Source of the DNA: Cyanophora paradoxa CCMP329
Lineage: Eukaryota; Plantae; Glaucophyta
Length of the DNA stretch: 64,000 nucleotides
Direction: 5' to 3'
Assembly: GCA_004431415.1 (NCBI GenBank)
Contig: QPMI01000066.1
Location: 62,001-126,000, forward strand
Under the pieces are notes generated by a model that did not search any database, was not told the DNA's origin, and saw only the letters and a list, made by a program, of their open reading frames with translations. Shown here piece by piece: positions 10,504 to 20,628 of the stretch; position 1 is the first letter of the stretch; each line of letters opens with the position of its first letter. The position numbers and the translations under genes were made by a program.

Positions 10504-10831
10504 TACTCAGAGAAACTTTCTGTCTCGAAATCTGCTGCCTGCCTGCCTTGCCAGCTTGAAGGCTCGAAGACTAACATTTGATCGCGGTTTGGGCCCCCAA
10601 CTTTGGGGGAGGGGGGGGTACGTACGCGTTGTTCACGCGAGAGGCGAGGGTTCGAGCTCGCGGCTTCCCGGAAGAGCCAGCCCGCCAGTAGCCGCGAGTT
10701 CCAGCAGTGCAGGAGGAGAGCTTTGTTACACTCGACCCTCGTCCCCATTCCGCGCCCGTCAATCATCTTGACGGACGCGCACGCGCCAGTCACCGAGTCT
10801 CGGCGGCGCTAGCGAACACTTATCGAGCAAC

Positions 10832-13800
10832 ATGGGGCTCGCAGGCTCGCCTCGCGCGGAGAGGCTTGCGCGCTGCCAGCAGCCGCCCCTGAAGAAACTT
10901 GCCCTCTTCGGCGCCCTAGCTCTTCTCGCGCTGGCATGCAGAGTCGAAGCACATGGAGACCACGGAGCATATGCGCATATTCGGGGGAAGCCGCCCAGCA
11001 TAGGGCGGTCGCTTCTCGCAACAGCGGAATCGGCCACGGGCGCGGCGACCAAGACCTACGAGGCGATCCGTGCGCCATCTTTCCGATTTCGATGTTTCTG
11101 CACGCTGGTACTGATGCTGGGGCCGCGCCGGTGCGCGGTGCGCGGATCAGGTCCCGCCTCGAGGTGCCGCGCACCGAGCGAGCTCATGATCGTGCGCGCG
11201 GCGGCCGGGAACAGCACGAACAAGCCCTTCAACCTCGATACGATACAGGTATACTGGTCTCGCTCCGCCCCGACCCCGGGGCCAGTGCGACGGTCGCCCC
11301 TCGCAGGTCTCCTCGCTGATCAAGGCGGCGAACGCGACCTTCGTCGACACGCGCTTCGCGACGCACTACTGCATCGACGGGCGGCACACGCACGCCTCGG
11401 TGCACACGCCCGGCGGCGACATCTCCGAGTTCCTGCTCGCCCTCGCCGCCTTCCAGCGCGTCGTGCTCGGCGGCGCGAACATCTCCGAGGAAGCCGTGTA
11501 CGCTGCGATGACCGCCTTCATCGACGCGTACGCCGTGCCGAACGAGCGGCCGTTCTACATGCACACGGACCACCACTCGGAGGAGCACCTGCGCAACATC
11601 ACGGGCGTGAACGCGACGTATAGCTTTGAGAAGCCGCCCGCCGCCGACCGCGACGGACTTCTCCGCGACAAGCTCGTCGAGCCCGACACGCTCGGTCCGC
11701 GGCGCTTCCGCGCCTCTGCGCCTCCGCATCGCACCGGGACCGACGCGCCGCTGCCGCCGCCGCCGCAGGCTGCGGGCACCTGAAGCGGACGCTGAAGAAC
11801 CCCGACATCTACCAGACGCCGGAGGCCCTCACGAAGGCCGTCATCCGCGCCTTCTTCCGCGCCCTCTGGCGCGACCACGACGCCGGGACCCACGCGGTCG
11901 AGTACATGGTTCGTTCCCGATCCCCCCCGCCCGCCTCACCGATTCTGCTTTCCTCGAAATTCGCAATCGACGGCGCTTCCCGCAGGTTCTACCCGGGGAG
12001 CACATGGAGGGCTCGCTGGTGGTGATGAAGGGCGCCGCCTGCGGGGACTCTGTCCTCACGTTCGTGCCCAACGTCCCGAGCCACGGCCAGGCCCGCCCGC
12101 CCCCGTCGACCGGCTCCTCGGCTCCGCCCTGACCGGCTGCGCCTCGCAGGTCTTCCTGTACCACCCGGAGGCGCTGGGGCACATCCGCCAGACCCTCGCC
12201 CGCTTCCTCTGCGACCGCAAGTGCGCCCGGGCGCCCCGGCGCCGCCCCGCGGCGGAGCCTGACCCGGCCCCGCCGCAGGACAGACCTGGGCGCCGCCGCC
12301 TCGGCCGCGTGCCACCCCAGCGCCATCCTCGCCGCCGCCTCTACCATCTTCGACGCGGGTCTCGCTAGCACCGCCGACGCGCTCGCCAAGGACCGCCCCC
12401 AGGACGTCATCCACGCGGGCGTCACCTCGGGCTGGGCCGGCGTCAGCACCGCCCAGCCGGCGGCCATCGACTCTGCGGCGGCGGGCAAGGCCGAGGCGGA
12501 GGCGGAGAAGACGCGCTCGAAGGACGCGTGCCCCGTTGTGGACGTCACCGCGCAGCTCGTGCAGGCGAGCCCGCCCACCACGCCGCTCCAGCCCGCCCAC
12601 TCCGCGCCGGCCGCCTTACCTCCCCGTGCGGCGCGCAGGCCGCCAACGTGTCGGACTCTGCCAAGCTCTGGCGCATCCTCTCGCAGGACCACGCCAAGGC
12701 CATGCTGGGCAAGCCCCCCATGGTCGACGTCGCCAACCACACGTGGTCCTGCATCGGTCCGCGCCTGTCCCGCGGCGCCCGCTGCCGCAGTTGCGCGCGT
12801 CGTCGCTGAGCTCGAGCAGACGGGCGCTCGGAGCACCACATTCTCGGCACCCCTGGCGGCACCATCTCCGAGTTCCTGCTCGCCCTCTCCGCCTTCCAGC
12901 GCCTCGGGGTCCGCCGCCCGCCCCACCGGGCCCATCGCTCCCCCTCTGACCGCTCCGGCGCAGTTCACCGTCGACAGCGAGGACACCGTGCAGGCGCTGC
13001 TCGACGCGTACGCGCAGGAGTACACCATCCCGTTCAAGCGCCAGTTCTACATGGTTCGATCCCGCTCCTGCGAGCTCCGAAGCCGTGGGGTTTGCGCCCT
13101 GCTGACGGGTCGGTGTCGGCGCGCAGCACACGGACTCGCACTCGCACGAGGCGATCGCCGCAGCTCTCGGGGTCGAGCCCGAGAAGCTGGACCTGAGCGC
13201 CCCGCCCGCGAAGCTGCGCCCCGCCGTCCTCACCATGTCGGCGGACCCGAAGTACATGGGATGCGGGCACGTGAAGCTGACGATCCAGAACCCATCCACG
13301 TACATGACCAACTCAACTGTCGCCGTGTGGGCGGTGCGGTCGTTCATGCGGGCGCTGTGGGCGGACAAGGCGCGCGGCGGGGGCCGCTTTGTCTTGGAGG
13401 TATTGGAGGGCGACCACCTGGAGGGCGGCATTCTCCTGATCCAGTCCGCCGGCTGCGCGGGCAAGGCGCGTGCCACGCCGTCCTCCACGCCGTCCTCCCG
13501 CCTCTTCCCCGTTGAGAATCTCGCCGCAGAGCGCCGAGGTGGCCCCCCTGGTCGGGCCCCTGACCCCCAACACGCCGCCCCCGCTCGGCAAGGGCGAGGT
13601 GCGCGCCGCGCCGCGCCGCCCCGCTGCTGCCCCGCCGCCCGACGCCGCCCGCCCGACGCCGGCGCAGGCGTTTGTGTTCCACTACGCCGACGTGCACGTC
13701 CTCCGCGAGTGGAACGCCCAGTTCTTCGCATCCGTAGCGACGACGCCCGGCATCTCCCCGGCCCCGCTCGCCCTCGCCCTGCTCCACAGCGCCGACGAGG

Positions 13801-16800
13801 CGTTCGTGCCCCAGGTGCCGCCGGATTCCCGTCTTGTTGCTATTCTATCTCTGAGCTGCTCGGGCGCGCGCCGCGCAGCTGGGCTACACGGTCGCGCAGC
13901 TGGCGAGCGGGCTGCCCATCTTCAACGACCTCGTCACGGGCTCGGCCAAGCTCGATCTCGTCGCCGCCGTCGCCGCCGCCAACGCCACCGTCGGCAGTGC
14001 GCGCGTCCCGCGGCCCTCCGCGCGTATCCATCCACCGGCGCCCATCGATGCCGCTCCGCAGACCGACGAATGGCGGACCGCACGCGCTTCACCTTCGAGC
14101 TCGCGCTGCCGACGCTCCCCTGCAGCGGTGTCACGCTCGCCCGCGTCAACAGCATCCGAGCCAACCTCGCCGCGTGCGCCGGCCCCCGCCCGCCCAGGCC
14201 GCTCTTCCGTCGCCGATCGAAGCCGGCGCGTGCCCTCCGCAGGAAGCTGGGCGCTGCGCAGCAGCGCGTGCTGGTCACGGCGATGCGCTGCGAGATCTCG
14301 GGCACCGCGCGCCGGCGCCTCGCCAGCGCCCTGAGCGGCTTCCGGCGCGGCGCCCGCGCTGAGGCGGCGATCGAGAAGGACGGGACGCAGACGGTCCTCA
14401 CCGTCGACCTCGTCGGCCCCGCCGCCGGTGCGCCGAACCGGCCCGTCCGCCCGCGGGCGACCGCCCGACATCGCCCGACATCGTCCGACGCGCCGCGCAG
14501 GCTCGAGCGACTCCCTCACGCTGGACGCGCTCGTGGCGCGCCTACGCAACACCGTCAAGTACTCGACGCTCTCCATCCTGTGCGCGCCCGCCCGCCGGGT
14601 CCCGTCGCGTGACTCCCGCGGCGTCTCTCTTACGCGCCCCCGGCTCGCTCGCGATCAGCGGCTACGGCAACCCGACCGTCCGCCTGCCGCCCGCGAGTTC
14701 CTTCCCCGAGCTCCCCGGCGCGAACAAGACCGCGTACCCCGCCGTCGGTTCGCCCGCCTCGAGCTCGGCGCCCCGCCCCGCCCCGCCGCCGTCGGTGACC
14801 GGCCCGCCCCGCCCCACGTGCAGCCCCGCAGCCGCGCTGCTCGCTCCTCGACAACATCGCCGTCAACCGCGCCGTTCCCGCCGGGAAGCACCCGGCCAAC
14901 CTCAGCCCCGATCAGGCGCGTCCGCCCGCCCGCCCGCCCGCCCGCCCGCCCTGCCCCGTCCGAGGCGAACGGGCTCTGCGCAGGTGGCTGCTCTCGTGAA
15001 GGCCGGCCGCCCCACCTTCGTCGACACGCGCTTCGCGACGCACTACTGCATCGACGGGCGGCACACGCGCGGCTCGGTGCACACGCCCGGCGGCGACATC
15101 TCCGAGTTCCTGCTCGCCCTCGCCGCCTTCCAGCGCGTCGTGCTCGGCGGGGCCGCCATCTCCGAGGACACCGTCTTCGCGATCATGACGGCCTTCATCG
15201 ACACGTACGCCGTGCCGAACGAGCGGCCGTTCTACCTCCACACGGACGAGCACTCGGAGGAGCACCTGCGGGGCGTCCTGGGGAAAGACGCCTCGTTCGA
15301 CGTCGCGAACCCGCCCACGGCCGCCGAGCGCGCCGCCGTCCTCGACGCCGTCATCGATCCCGAGTCCCTCGGCTGCGGGCACCTGAAGCGGACGCTCAAG
15401 AACCCCGACATCTACCAGACGCCGGAGGCCCTCACGAAGGCCGTCATCCGCGCCTTCTTCCGCGCCCTCTGGCGCGACCGCGACGCCGGCACCGGTGCCG
15501 TGGTGTACATGGTGCGCGGCGCACGCGGGCGGGCCTGCAGGCAGCCGGCGGCGGCGCCGCCGCCGATGCGGCCGGGCTCGGAATTTCTGAAATTCGGAAT
15601 TTCAGGTTCTGCCGGGCGACCACATGGAGGGATCCGTCCTCGTCGTCTCGGGCGCCCCCTGCGGCGACTCGGTGATGACGTTCGCCCCGAACGTGCCGAA
15701 CCAGGGCCAGGTCTTCCTGTACCACCCGGAGGCCCTGGGCCACATCCGCCAGACCCTCGCCCGCTTCCTCTGCGACCGCAAGTGCGCCCGGGCGCCCCGG
15801 CGCCGCCCCGCGGCGCAGCCTGACACGGCCCCCGCCGCAGGACCGACCTGGGCGCAGCCGCCTCGGCCGCGTGCCTGCCGAGCCGCGTGCGGGCCGCGGC
15901 GGGCCCGATCTTCAGCGCCGGCTTCGCCAGCACGGCGGCGGCGCTGGCGGCCAACCGGCCGCAGGACATCCTGACCCTCGCCGCGGTCAACGTGGCCGGC
16001 CTCCCCGGCGCCGACTCGTCGGTCCCCGACCCGGCGGACGCCGCGCCGGCAGCGACGGAGACGGCGGTGGCGGCGGCGACGGCCCACGGGGACGCGCACT
16101 CGGGCGGCGAGCAGTGCGCCGTCATGGACGTCACCGCCCAACTCGCCCAGGCGAGCGAGCCCCCAACGATCCGGCCCGCGCCGATTCATTTTCGTCGCAG
16201 GCGTCCAAGGAGAGCGACCCGGCCAAGCTCTGGCGCATCCTCTCGCAGGACCACGCCAAGGCCATGCTGGGCAAGCCCCCCATGGTCGACGTCTCCGGCC
16301 ACACGTGGTCCTGCATCGGTCCGGACCCGCTCCACACCGCTGCTTGCCTCTTTCTGACGCGTCTCCCAGACGGGCGCTCGGAGGAGCACATCCTCGGCAC
16401 GCCCGGCGGCACCATCTCCGAGTTCCTGCTCGCCCTCTCCGCCTTCCAGCGCCTCGGGGTCCGCCGCCCGCCCCGCCGGCATCGTCCTTCTCTGACCGCT
16501 CCGGCGCAGTTCACCATCGACAGCGAGGACACCGTGCAGGCGCTGCTCGACGCGTACGCGCAGGAGTACACCATCCCGTTCAAGCGCCAGTTCTACATGG
16601 TTCGATAACGCCCCTGTTAGCAACGAAGAAGCTTGCGCCCTGCTGACGTGCGCGCAGCACACGGACTCGCACGCGCACGAGGCGATGGCCGCGGCTCTGG
16701 GCGTCGAGCCCGCGAAGCTGGACCTGAGCGCCCCGCCCGCGAAGCTGCGCCCCGCGGTCCTCACCATGTCGGCGGACCCGAAGTACATCGGATGCGGGCA

Positions 16801-18740
16801 CGTGAAGCTGACGATCCAGAACCCGTCCACATACATGACCGACTCGACGGTCGCCGTGTGGGCGGTGCGGTCGTTCATGCGGGCGCTGTGGGCGGACAAG
16901 GCGCGCGGCGGGGGCCGCTTCGTGCTGGAGGTGCTGGAGGGCGAGCATCTGGAGGGCGCCGTCATCCTCGTCCAGTCCGCCGGCTGCCCCGGCTACGTGC
17001 GCCCTCTCTGCACCCAAACCGTCCGTCCGGCGCGTCCGCTGTGCCATCTGAACCGTCCGCAGGCGCCGATCGTCGAGCCGATGGTGGGACCTCTTAAGCC
17101 GGGCGAGAAGCCCGCACTTGGCAAGGGCGAGGTGCGCGCCGCGCCGCCCCGCTGCTGCCCCGCCGACCGGCGCCGCCCGCCCGACGCCGGCGCAGGCGTT
17201 TGTGTTCCACTACGCCGATGTGCACGTCCTGCGCGAGTGGAACGCCCAGTTCTTCGGGGGGCCGGCGGTGGCCGCCGTGGCGGCCGGCCTCCCCTCGCGG
17301 AAGCCGCAGCTGGCCAACGTGACGCGGGCGGCGCTGCTGAGCGCAATGGACGCCGCCTTCCGGCCGCAGCTGAACGCCACCGTCGGCGCCCTCGCCTCTA
17401 CCCTCCCGCAGTAGTCCGCCCGCCCCCTCCCCCCGCCTTCCTCGACTTCGTTCGCCGCTCAGCGACTCGCCTTCGCGCAGCGTCGACACGGTGACGGGCG
17501 AGGGCGACGCGGAGCTGCTGCACCTGCTGGAGACGGCGCAGAAGCAGACGGCCAACCTGACGCAGGCGCGGGGCGAGAAATACACTTTCGGCGTGCGCCT
17601 CGAGCTGCTCCCATGCACGCGCGTCGACGCCTGGACCGTCACCGACGTCCGCGCCAAGCTCGCCGCGTGCGCCCCCTGTCTGCTCGCTTGTTAGCGCGTA
17701 CGTACGTTTTCTTCGGCCTTCCGAGCGATCGGCCGTCTCTGTCTCGCAGGGCCGTCGGCATCCCCGCCGGGCGTGTGTGGGCGACGGGCATCAGCTGCAG
17801 CCTGGGGCCCGCCGCCGCCCGCCACCGCCAGCGCCGCCGGCTGAGCAACGAGGGCGGCTCCAGCACAGCCGCGGCCAAGTGCGCTCCCCCTCCCACCCGA
17901 GTCGAATCGCCCCTGACTCCTCCCCCCTCCCTCCCCCCTCCCTCCCCCGCAGGACGCCTGCGCCGACTCCCTCGCCGCTGCCGCCCGGGCCCTCCGTCAC
18001 CCTCGGCATGGACATCACGGGGCCCACCAGTGCGCCGCCACACCCGCCCGCCCGCCCGGCCTCATCCCCCCCCTCCCCCCCCCCCCCCCCCCCCCCCCCC
18101 TGCAGCCAAGGAGGACCGCGTCTCCATCGACGACGTCATCGCGACCCTGCGGGCCACCTCCAATCTCAACCTGCCGTGCGCCCGCTCTATAAATGGATGC
18201 TCAAATCGGCCGGCGTCCGTTAGGATCGTTTCGCCGCTCAAGCAATAGCCCCAGGGGGTACCACGCGCGCACGGTCGTCCCGGCGGCCTCGGCGTACCGC
18301 TCGAGCGAGCCCAAGTCGGAGGGCTCGGGCGGCGTGAACCCCGCCGCGATCGCCGTCCCCGTCGTCCTCGGCACCGTCCTCATCGCCGCCGTCGCCTTCG
18401 GCGTCTGGCGCTACAAGTCCCGCCGCAACGTCTCCTTCAAGGTACCCCCTTCTCCCCCCCCCCCCCCCTCCAAAAAAAAGAAACTCGAACTCGAAATCTG
18501 ATCGCCCGGTAGGATAACAAGAAGGGGGGGGAGGAGGCCCGGGGAGCGACCCCGGCGCCCGGCCCCAAGATCGCCTTCGCGGGCGGCGCTGGCCCCGCGC
18601 GGGCCGCCTTTCCCGCGGCCGCCGGGGATGGCGGCTCGGCGGCAGGCGCGGCGGGGACGGCGGTCAGCAGCGGCCTCGGCCTGCCGACCCTGGAGATGCC
18701 CCCGCTCGCGGCGCCAGCCGCCCTCCCGAACTCGATGTAG
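10832..18740 (+). CDS. Type I membrane protein with four tandem zeta-class (CDCA)/beta-like carbonic anhydrase-like domains
   Basis: Signal-peptide-like KKLALFGALALLALACRVEA. Four domains each have CIDGR (11370; 12750 split by intron; 15047; 16312 split by intron), TPGG-ISEFLLAL, HTD and GCGH (11694/11769, 13259, 15371, 16790). Two stalk domains carry RRRL. TM helix AAIAVPVVLGTVLIAAVAFGVW (~18343-18408) is followed by RYKSRR. Stop TAG at 18738-18740. Confidence 0.8.
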
Positions 18741-19331
18741 CGGCCGGACCTGGGGAAGACGCCCCTGCGGCCGGCCGCCCCTCCAGCGGCGGCCACGGTA
18801 ATGCTTTCGAGCATCCAGGTTCGATGCCTCATGCCTCATGCGTATTGTATTGCAACAGGTAAGACGTAGTATATCGCGACCGGGTGATCGAATTGTGAAA
18901 GTAGATGTATGCCGTGGTGGCCGGCAGCGCCGGCGCGCGGCCCGCCGGCGCGGCGCGGTGCGGACCCTGGCCCAAGGGTCCTTGGCGGCCGCAGCCCTGG
19001 CCATGGCCATGGCCAGGCCGGGGTCAAGCTTAAGAGGCCCATGCCAAGCTCTCCGATGCAAGCTAGCTCTCCGAGGCTCGAAGGCTCACGACCAGAATCG
19101 AAGCTGATGGTCGTGGTCGAAGGGGGGGCCGGGGCCTTCAGCTTAAGCTTCAAGGGGCCCAATTGCAAGCTTCAACTTGACTCTGCTTGATCTGGATCGA
19201 GAAATACTAGATTCGAGATTGTAGAGAACTTAACCTTGTCGTCGAGTTGTCGATCGAAATCGGCCGGCAAATTCGAATTTGAATTAAAGCACTACTACTA
19301 GTACTAGTAATATAGTCTAGTATACGTACTA

Positions 19332-19567
19332 CCGTAGACGACTTATATACCGCGCTGACTTAAATACCGCGGCCGCGCTGCCAAATTACCGCGCTCAAAA
19401 TTTTTAGAACGCAGTAATTTGGTAGCGCAGTATTACCCCCTTTGCTAACAAATAATACATTTTCGAAGACGATGGAACGCGGTAATTTGGTAGCGCGGTA
19501 AAGCGCATACCGGCGCCGAAATTTTAGAACGCGGTAATATGTGGCGCGGTATTTAAGTCGTCTACGG
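19332..19567. mobile_element. Non-autonomous Tc1/mariner(pogo)-like MITE, ~236 bp
   Basis: TIRs CCGTAGACGACTTATATACCGCGC / GCGCGGTATTTAAGTCGTCTACGG (one mismatch), TA on both sides (19330-31, 19568-69), AT-rich interior with repeated taccgcgc/gcgcggta motifs. Confidence 0.75.
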
Positions 19568-20628
19568 TAGTATATACGTAGTAGTAGTGCTGCTAGTGCA
19601 TGGTAGAGCTGTGCTCGCTGGGGGGGGCCGGGCCCAGCGGCCGCTATAGCGCCGCGAGCGGCACCCGTCGCTGGCCCGTCGCTCAGCTGGGGGTACCGCC
19701 AAAACCTGACGAAAAAATGCTGAAAACCGATCGAAAACCTATCTGTTCCGCTAAGTTTGTTCGTACAAGCTCTTAAGCCGCAAACTCAGGTTTAATGCAT
19801 GGTTTTGCGAGCCATGCGCGCGTCGATTTCAGCGAGATTGAGGCCAGCCGCAGGCGGCTTGCAGGCTGCTTTAATAATTTTGGGCGAAACGGGGCGCCCG
19901 CCGCCTGCCAGGCTGGATGCTTGAAAACAGTCGGAATTTAGCAAGATTGATCGGCTACGCCGACCTACGTCGACCTTCAGATGAGAAAAAAGCGGGGCGG
20001 GGCTTTTTTTGGCGCCTGTCGGCCACAAAAAACGCCGAGCGAGGAGGCGTCGCTGGCGGAAAACGCCGAGCGTAGCGGCCGCTAGCGCTGGGACCTCGCG
20101 AGCGAAGCGACCACCAGCTACCACAGCCCTAGTGCATGGTACGGTTGGTACCGGTACCGTGCGCAGATGGCTCCGAGGAGCCCACCGTGCGAGATACCAT
20201 TGTACCAACTCCTCTTGTACCCAATTTGCGACGCGACTCAAAAGAGTCCGAAATTTCTGTACAAGCCGTGATGCGCCCGCCGGGACTTCGAACCGGCATT
20301 GGCTTTGTTCGTGTGTCACTCCCCCAACCCGGCGGTCGCAGCAGCTGCAGGTTGCAGCCTTAACTTGCAGGCGCCGCGAGCTCCCAAATTGCACTGGCAA
20401 AGCGCTAACAGTCGCATGCAAGCGTGCTAGCGCATGCGCAGCACCGTGGCACTCGGAGGGGTCGAAGCAAGCATCGGAGCTCGAGGGATCGACCCGAGGC
20501 CAGAGTGACGTGGGCGGCTCCTGCAGCTGCTCCTGGCTGCACAGCGGAAAGCGGCGAAAGGCATGCAAAGGCGCGACGTCGGCGGCTTGGTGCACGTGGG
20601 CCTCGCGCCTCTCGCGGAAAGCCTGCGG

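What the first reader, a model, noticed from the sequence alone, without database searches (positions are those of the whole stretch)
11308..17260. Membrane-anchored four-domain zeta-like carbonic anhydrase, hidden by introns
Seen: after splicing, four homologous domains each keep C-I-D-G-R, T-P-G-G, (M/L)-H-T-D and G-C-G-H. Several of these motifs are split by introns (CI-D at 12757-12819 and 16319-16369; LG-CGH at 11695-11768), so the ORF track misses them. The protein has a signal peptide and one C-terminal TM helix. Established: diatom zeta-class cadmium CA (CDCA1) uses CxDGR...PGG...HGD...GCG, with Cys-His-Cys metal ligands and an Asp-Arg dyad, and occurs as tandem repeats. Difference seen here: His-to-Cys spacing is ~45 aa in domain 1, much longer than the ~10 aa of CDCA, and the enzyme appears surface-tethered. 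Inference: a candidate uncharacterised subfamily of extracellular, possibly Zn/Cd-cambialistic CA acting in inorganic carbon uptake in a non-diatom alga.
Basis: partly seen in the sequence, partly recalled or inferred. Interest (0 to 1): 0.85.

Follow-up and report, generated by a model that had tools for sequence, protein, structure and literature searches.

The report
Membrane-anchored zeta-fold carbonic anhydrase candidate
A real, spliced gene of the freshwater alga Cyanophora paradoxa encodes a membrane-anchored protein with four domains that fold like the diatom cadmium carbonic anhydrase but belong to a separate, unnamed family found across protists and bacteria, making it an untested candidate for a CO2/bicarbonate-converting enzyme on the cell surface or inside secretory vacuoles.

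Summary
The gene is larger than reported: 10832-18740 (+), 34 exons, 1889 aa. It matches the public Cyanophora paradoxa model tig00000254_g22470.t1, whose best published hit is a hypothetical protein. RNA contigs confirm 11 introns. Layout: signal peptide, [domain A, domain B, SEA-like spacer] twice, one TM helix, tail. All four domains keep Cys/Asp/Arg, His, Cys-Gly; His-to-Cys spacing is 45 (CDCA1: 10). An AlphaFold model (pLDDT 96) matches only diatom CDCA1 (Z about 12, next 3.3). No Pfam, NCBIfam or PDB sequence model recognises any of 143 aligned family domains. The family (637 clusters) includes non-photosynthetic amoebozoa, alveolates, a euglenid and myxobacteria. Members are fused to H+-pyrophosphatase or rhodanese, or lie beside bestrophin or SulP genes. 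Best reading: a zinc carbonic anhydrase of the zeta fold facing outside or a lumen; not a sequence member of the CDCA family. Activity, metal and location are untested; cadmium use has no support; ligand geometry could not be measured. Rivals: contractile-vacuole enzyme, COS/CS2 hydrolase. First readers noted paralogs elsewhere in this genome.

The parts
10832..18740 (+). Whole gene, ATG to stop; 34 exons, 33 introns, 1889-aa type I membrane protein (public model tig00000254_g22470.t1)
   Evidence: model; 1886/1890 columns identical to P0002; 11 introns seen as joints
10895..10951 (+). Hydrophobic core of predicted signal peptide (aa 22-40)
   Evidence: hydropathy; similar stretch in P0003, P0004, P0152; no dedicated predictor run
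11307..12432 (+). Catalytic-like domain 1 (type A; aa 113-398); Cys at 11370, His at 11562, Cys at 11771
11695..11768 (+). Intron splitting the Gly codon before Cys-Gly-His of domain 1; absent from domain 3
   Evidence: GT..AG; one RNA contig piece ends at 11695, joint itself not displayed
12687..13956 (+). Catalytic-like domain 2 (type B; aa 459-752); Cys at 12750, His at 13127, Cys at 13262
12757..12819 (+). Intron splitting the Asp codon of CIDGR in domain 2
   Evidence: GT..AG; agrees with P0002; not among displayed joints
14067..14671 (+). SEA-like (ferredoxin-fold) spacer 1 (aa 768-895), two conserved Cys and a basic RRRL loop
   Evidence: introns confirmed by RNA joints
14984..16000 (+). 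Catalytic-like domain 3 (type A; aa 952-1239); Cys at 15047, His at 15239, Cys at 15374; core in one exon 14984-15511
   Evidence: folded and matched to CDCA1
16249..17517 (+). Catalytic-like domain 4 (type B; aa 1306-1608); Cys at 16312, His at 16658, Cys at 16793
16319..16369 (+). Intron splitting the Asp codon of CIDGR in domain 4
   Evidence: joint in three RNA-like runs, none in the DNA-like run
17563..18258 (+). SEA-like spacer 2 (aa 1624-1753) with basic RQRRRL loop
   Evidence: homologous to spacer 1, E 1.7e-9; alignment
18340..18408 (+). Single transmembrane helix (aa 1781-1803) followed by basic residues
18409..18740 (+). Low-complexity cytoplasmic tail (aa 1804-1889) and stop

Best explanation
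A type I membrane carbonic anhydrase of the zeta (CDCA-like) fold that works at the cell surface. The protein enters the secretory pathway by its signal peptide and is held by one C-terminal helix, so that four catalytic domains on two SEA-like stalks face outward. In each domain Cys, His and Cys would bind Zn2+, and the Asp-Arg pair would orient the metal-bound water that attacks CO2. This speeds CO2/HCO3- exchange outside the membrane, supplying CO2 for uptake and buffering surface pH. Shown: gene, splicing (in part), residue conservation, fold match. Inferred: metal binding, catalysis, plasma-membrane location, role in carbon supply. My estimate that it is a CA of any location is about 0.7; the confidence below is for CA plus cell surface.
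For: Only CDCA1 matches the fold: Foldseek ranks 1-6, best E 9e-4; Z 11.8-12.3, rmsd 3.3-3.7, about 182 residues aligned, next unrelated row Z 3.3. C, D, R, H, C are all present in 126 of 143 family domains, first Cys in 143/143, and in all four domains here. Same order as CDCA1 Cys473/Asp475/His525/Cys535/Gly536. Context points to bicarbonate/proton chemistry: a bestrophin gene within 5 kb in 15 and SulP in 6 of 80 bacterial loci, and fusion to H+-pyrophosphatase. Spacers resemble SEA domains of surface proteins. The family is expanded in a photosynthetic alga: at least 7 Cyanophora gene models, plus a two-domain signal+TM version in Gloeochaete.
Against: No activity, metal or localisation data. 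Model coordinates were not returned, so the Cys-His-Cys distances could not be measured. TM-score to CDCA1 is only 0.45 by query and 0.58 by target. An invariant His follows Cys-Gly where CDCA1 has pocket residue Phe537. Most relatives are non-photosynthetic. No CO2-response data could be read from contigs. A shared fold does not show function: CDCA1 itself also hydrolyses CS2.
Confidence: 0.45

Rival explanations
1. Same enzyme chemistry, but facing the lumen of an endomembrane compartment (contractile vacuole, acidic vacuole or mucocyst). There it couples pumped protons and bicarbonate to CO2 and water for osmoregulation or pH control, not carbon uptake.
For: Type I topology fits a lumen equally well. 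Amoebozoan-side relatives fuse the domain, behind a signal peptide, to an H+-pyrophosphatase-like protein (P0012, P0021 Planoprotostelium, P0048; one clade). H+-PPase and V-ATPase are contractile-vacuole pumps, and a bicarbonate osmotic gradient has been proposed (PMC3060929). C. paradoxa has a contractile vacuole (PMC6704402). Relatives occur in heterotrophic protists.
Against: Multi-domain expansion with stalk domains was seen here mainly in glaucophytes. The PPase fusion is one clade apart from the glaucophyte group. No sorting signal is conserved between the P0002 and P0003 tails.
Confidence: 0.25
2. A zeta-fold hydrolase for another small substrate (COS or CS2, releasing H2S), with CO2 hydration weak or secondary.
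For: Bacterial members are mostly fused to rhodanese. 12 of 80 loci also hold a metallo-beta-lactamase/rhodanese (persulfide dioxygenase-like) or DUF6691 (YeeE-like, my reading) gene. CDCA1 hydrolyses CS2, and the beta-CA-fold CS2 hydrolase of Acidianus has no CA activity (PMC8217695). The pocket differs (invariant His).
Against: Many fused rhodanese domains appear to lack the catalytic Cys (rough pattern match). Bestrophin or SulP neighbours are more frequent (21 of 80 loci). Bacteria form a separate clade, so their context need not apply to the alga. Neighbour counts are not phylogenetically independent.
Confidence: 0.15
3. A non-catalytic or closed metal site: the invariant His after Cys-Gly is a fourth ligand, and the protein is a surface metal-binding, sensing or adhesion molecule built from a CA scaffold.
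For: That His is invariant in 143/143 rows, more conserved than the presumed ligands His (128) and second Cys (131). An alveolate-side clade swaps His to Cys and Cys to Asp together, and some members lose the motifs. SEA-like stalks and basic putative cleavage loops are typical of surface receptors.
Against: The Asp-Arg dyad is kept in 142/143 rows and all four domains are intact. Soluble single-domain members without signal or TM are common.
Confidence: 0.1
4. One reading: a true zeta-class, Cd/Zn-cambialistic enzyme. This is orthogonal to location, and the confidence is for Cd use being physiologically real.
For: Fold and ligand set match CDCA1.
Against: Metal exchange in CDCA1 depends on a short flexible linker between metal-binding residues (PMC4413181); here the His-Cys linker is 45 residues with two helices. 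No match to the Pfam CDCA model or to CDCA1 sequences. C. paradoxa is a freshwater alga (own knowledge), outside the Zn-starved ocean setting invoked for CDCA1.
Confidence: 0.1

Closest known systems
Zeta-class carbonic anhydrase CDCA1 of Thalassiosira weissflogii (PDB 3BOH, 3BOB, 3UK8, 7BEZ; Pfam PF18484)
   Same: Fold (Z about 12, rmsd about 3.5 over about 182 residues, 19-23% identity); order Cys-x-Asp-x-Arg ... His ... Cys-Gly; tandem repeats in one chain.
   Different: Domain of about 285 aa against 210; Cys-to-His 62-64 against 52; His-to-Cys 45 (38-75 across the family) against 10; His instead of Phe after Cys-Gly; no HMM or sequence match; two alternating domain types only 34-38% identical (CDCA1 repeats 80-82%); SEA-like spacers and TM anchor; wide non-diatom range.
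Beta-class carbonic anhydrases and the beta-fold CS2/COS hydrolases
   Same: Cys-His-Cys zinc ligands and Asp-Arg dyad (PMC8217695); weak structural match to Porphyridium beta-CA 1DDZ (Z 3.2).
   Different: No H-x-x-C motif; no Pfam Pro_CA match; fold match at noise level.
Theta-class CA / LCIB family (Pfam PF18599)
   Same: Cys/His/Cys-type site with a lengthened His-Cys linker (own knowledge); present in the same genome according to unchecked notes of this scan.
   Different: No Pfam match and no structural hit.
SEA domains of mucins and surface receptors (MUC16, TMPRSS6, CELSR1)
   Same: The spacer model has a ferredoxin-like fold whose best match is a MUC16-type SEA domain (Z 8.6, rmsd 3.2, 96 residues), in the same extracellular, membrane-proximal position.
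   Different: Z is tied with other ferredoxin folds; no Pfam hit for the spacer exons or P0002; model pLDDT 72 from 7 sequences.

Membership tests
zeta-CA (CDCA) | Two Cys and one His ligands with Asp-Arg dyad, in the order C-x-D-x-R ... H ... C-G | tested here: met
   All four domains; 126/143 family rows; CDCA1 residues from PMC8217695. Equivalence is by motif order, not by a residue-level superposition.
zeta-CA (CDCA) | CDCA1 fold | tested here: met
   Foldseek top six all CDCA1; Z 11.8-12.3 against 3.3 for the next row. Domain 3 only was modelled.
zeta-CA (CDCA) | Match to Pfam PF18484 or to CDCA1 by sequence profile | tested here: not met
   No hit for exons, for 143 members, or for three profiles against PDB sequences at E up to 10.
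zeta-CA (CDCA) | Short His-to-Cys linker (10 residues) and Phe after Cys-Gly in the CO2 pocket | tested here: not met
   Spacing 45; invariant His at that position.
zeta-CA (CDCA) | The three ligands converge on one metal site in 3D | tested here: inconclusive
   Aligned ranges and secondary structure are compatible, but the tools return no coordinates.
zeta-CA (CDCA) | CO2 hydration activity | not testable with these tools
   Needs an assay.
zeta-CA (CDCA) | Cd/Zn exchange with activity on both metals | not testable with these tools
   Needs metal reconstitution; no indirect support found.
beta-CA | H-x-x-C motif, Pfam PF00484, beta-CA fold | tested here: not met
   Spacing 45; no Pfam hit; Z 3.2.
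theta-CA / LCIB | Pfam PF18599 or LCIB-like structure | tested here: not met
   No hit.
SEA domain (spacers) | Ferredoxin-like SEA fold in an ectodomain | tested here: inconclusive
   Best rows are SEA domains at Z 7.8-8.6, tied with unrelated ferredoxin folds; no Pfam hit.
CS2/COS hydrolase | H2S release from CS2 or COS; hydrophobic entry tunnel | not testable with these tools
   No coordinates or assay; only bacterial gene context.

The most novel reading that the evidence does not exclude
The domain defines an undescribed, ancient carbonic anhydrase family, sister to the zeta class, with its own active-site design (long His-Cys insert, invariant extra His, a Cys/Cys/Asp variant). It is spread over several eukaryotic supergroups and bacteria, is coupled to proton pumps and bicarbonate channels, and supplies the so far unidentified external CA of the glaucophyte CO2-concentrating mechanism.
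Probability: 0.35. Interest if true: 0.8.

Novelty: new variant of a known kind. Interest (0 to 1): 0.6.

Why it matters
The reviews read here list zeta-CA as a diatom enzyme (PMC4413181, PMC7215798), and CA inventories rely on Pfam models (PMC8119650), which miss this family completely. If active, hundreds of 'hypothetical' or 'rhodanese-like' proteins in glaucophytes, amoebae, alveolates, euglenids and myxobacteria are unrecognised CAs. The origin of the diatom cadmium enzyme would gain an outgroup for studying how metal exchange evolved, and glaucophyte carbon uptake would gain a concrete, testable surface component. The PPase fusion gives a handle on the bicarbonate model of contractile-vacuole filling. 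A single 285-aa domain or a soluble bacterial homolog makes the test cheap.

Tried and rejected
No hits: Pfam and NCBIfam, exon by exon and for 143 members; PDB sequence searches (the LHCI, capping-protein and IF1 rows are noise); ESM Atlas by features and by shape; viral structures; phage and plasmid records; papers carrying the motif words. Literature searches found no description of this family; most subscription papers are not searched. The search for related loci with the broad alignment failed and was rerun with a bacterial alignment, so the genome scan is biased to one motif. The IQ-TREE run did not finish; only a FastTree tree is used and no root or transfer is claimed. Two papers on CA in the contractile vacuole could not be fetched, and the Heuser 1993 text was not held in full. 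Rejected: two separate genes (one open frame, one public model, RNA contigs spanning spacer 1 into domain 3); pseudogene or chance motifs; a recent bacterial gene (glaucophyte domains fall outside the bacterial clade). Searches were by exon reference, and whole-domain tests used parts of the public protein P0002 by id. Reads were laid on 6000 letters only (10830-16829), so 16830-18740, including the TM exon, has no RNA test here.
Full report
Observation. I rebuilt the gene from the sequence. It runs from ATG 10832 to the stop at 18740 on the + strand, with 34 exons and 33 introns of 50-94 nt (28 GT-AG, 5 GC-AG), giving one open frame of 1889 aa. The motifs CIDGR, TPGG, (M/L)HTD and GCGH each occur four times in order, and nowhere else in the window. 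A search with one exon (14984-15511) returned P0002, which is identical to my model in 1886 of 1890 columns and is Cyanophora paradoxa tig00000254_g22470.t1. The genome paper's supplement gives its best hit as a hypothetical protein of Candidatus Falkowbacteria, and that of paralog g17585 as an Acanthamoeba hypothetical protein (PMC6704402). Three RNA-like runs from three studies show joints at 11 of my introns, among them 16319-16369 and four of the six between domain 2 and domain 3. The DNA-like run shows none and covers these places unspliced. One contig runs from spacer 1 into domain 3. As the operators required, the joined model was not sent to any search tool; whole-domain tests used parts of P0002 by id.

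Anatomy. Signal-like hydrophobic stretch (aa 22-40); domain 1 (113-398); domain 2 (459-752); spacer 1 (768-895); domain 3 (952-1239); domain 4 (1306-1608); spacer 2 (1624-1753); TM helix (1781-1803) with basic residues behind it; tail. Domains 1 and 3 are 75% identical, 2 and 4 are 79%, and the two types are 34-38%. The unit A-B-spacer occurs once in paralog P0004 and twice here and in P0003; Gloeochaete P0152 has signal, two domains and TM. Some intron pairs between the halves are 87-95% identical and others are at background, which suggests gene conversion. The spacer folds as a ferredoxin-like domain whose best matches are SEA domains (inconclusive as to family).

What the domain is. No Pfam or NCBIfam model and no PDB sequence recognises it. 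An AlphaFold model of domain 3 from a 143-row alignment is confident (pLDDT 96, pTM 0.94). Foldseek ranks the six CDCA1 entries first (best E 9e-4, TM 0.45 by query and 0.58 by target). An independent all-against-one structural search gives CDCA1 Z 11.8 (rmsd 3.7, 183 residues, 23% identity), with the next row at 3.3 and red-algal beta-CA at 3.2; a second look gives Z 11.8-12.3 for five CDCA1 chains. In CDCA1-R3 the metal is bound by Cys473, His525 and Cys535, the water contacts Asp475 and Gly536, and Phe537 lines the CO2 pocket (PMC8217695). Here the order is the same, with Cys-to-His 62-64 and His-to-Cys 45 residues in all four domains. The insert holds two helices and ranges from 38 to 75 residues across the family. 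The position after Cys-Gly is an invariant His (143/143).

The family. The exon alone finds 637 clusters at 50% identity. Named members: at least seven Cyanophora models, Gloeochaete, the amoebozoans Synstelium, Luapelamoeba and Planoprotostelium, the alveolates Vitrella and Colponema, the euglenid Ploeotia, and 153 matches in bacterial genomes, mostly Myxococcota among the 80 shown. In a FastTree tree the bacterial rows lie on one side of a branch with support 100, and the glaucophyte domains group apart from them (support 93). This argues for a long eukaryotic history, but no root or transfer is claimed. Database names are 'hypothetical' or 'rhodanese-like'. A TM helix after the domain occurs only on the non-bacterial side (14 of 58 proteins, against 0 of 76). 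Three proteins carry an H+-pyrophosphatase-like region behind the domain. Bacterial neighbours include bestrophin (15 of 80 loci, usually adjacent), SulP (6), DUF6691 (10) and MBL-rhodanese (10); these loci are related, so the counts are not independent.

How it most likely works. Shown: an expressed, spliced gene for a type I membrane protein with four intact zeta-fold domains. Inferred from the CDCA1 and beta-CA mechanism: Zn bound by Cys-His-Cys, Asp-Arg positioning the hydroxide, CO2/HCO3- interconversion on the non-cytosolic side. I put CA activity at about 0.7, split into cell surface (0.45) and endomembrane lumen (0.25). The lumen reading rests on the PPase fusion, the heterotrophic relatives, the contractile vacuole of C. 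paradoxa and the proposed bicarbonate gradient in such vacuoles (PMC3060929). A COS/CS2 hydrolase (0.15) is suggested by the sulfur-related bacterial context and by CDCA1's own CS2 activity. A closed four-ligand or non-catalytic site gets 0.1. Cadmium use has no support: the exchange in CDCA1 depends on a short linker between ligands (PMC4413181) that is replaced here by a long insert.

Comparison and novelty. It works, most likely, like a zeta-CA. It is not a member of the CDCA sequence family: profile match, linker length and pocket residue were tested and not met. It is not beta or theta by the same tests. The reviews read restrict zeta-CA to diatoms; from my own knowledge, the Pfam CDCA model also hits some non-diatom sequences, so 'zeta outside diatoms' alone is not new. 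What appears undescribed is this separate family and its membrane-anchored, PPase-fused and rhodanese-fused forms. Ten literature searches found no account, with the caveat that most subscription papers are not covered. First readers of this scan noted similar genes on four other pieces of this genome. I saw paralogous proteins with such layouts but could not match them to those notes, and they are not independent support.

Verdict. Observation confirmed; interpretation partly supported; new variant of a known kind; interest 0.6. The fold assignment is solid, the enzyme activity and location are untested, and a single-domain assay would settle the main question.

Noticed in passing
proteins P0012, P0021, P0048, P0106 (loci L002, L003): Signal peptide + this CA-like domain + H+-pyrophosphatase-like membrane protein in one chain (Planoprotostelium fungivorum PRP75325.1 and metagenomic relatives; no Pfam PPase hit for the shorter P0106). 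They form one clade. I found no description of such a fusion.
   Followed up: partly
proteins P0114, P0040, P0049, P0063, P0076 and others in alignment A1: A clade with Vitrella and Colponema members replaces the ligand His by Cys (15 rows) and often the second Cys by Asp (10 rows) while keeping the extra His: a possible alternative metal site.
   Followed up: partly
window 12221-12278 vs 15782-15840; 12909-12963 vs 16459-16509; 13599-13667 vs 17132-17195: Three intron pairs of the two halves are 87-95% identical, while the other nine pairs are at background (47-64%; mean 54, sd 6.5). This suggests patchy gene conversion between the halves. Domain 1 also has two introns that domain 3 lacks.
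   Followed up: partly
window about 14310-14325 and 17820-17845: Both SEA-like spacers carry a basic RRRL loop, conserved in paralogs; possible proprotein-convertase site that would cut the ectodomain.
   Followed up: no
loci L004-L083: In myxobacteria and some Planctomycetota the domain is mostly fused to rhodanese and annotated only as such. Neighbours: bestrophin 15, DUF6691 10, MBL-rhodanese 10, porin 9, SulP 6 of 80 loci.
   Followed up: partly
window 19327-19572: Short A+T-richer element with 29-nt, 97% inverted ends and internal repeats, just downstream of the gene; looks like a MITE.
   Followed up: no
proteins P0007, P0008, P0157, P0067: P0007 is a Cyanophora paralog without signal or TM (possibly cytosolic or a truncated model). 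P0008 has one degenerate and one near-intact domain. P0157 and P0067 lack catalytic residues.
   Followed up: no
window 10832-18740: PMC6704402 supplement lists this gene among transcripts with a long antisense ORF; probably a by-product of high G+C and codon bias, not tested.
   Followed up: no
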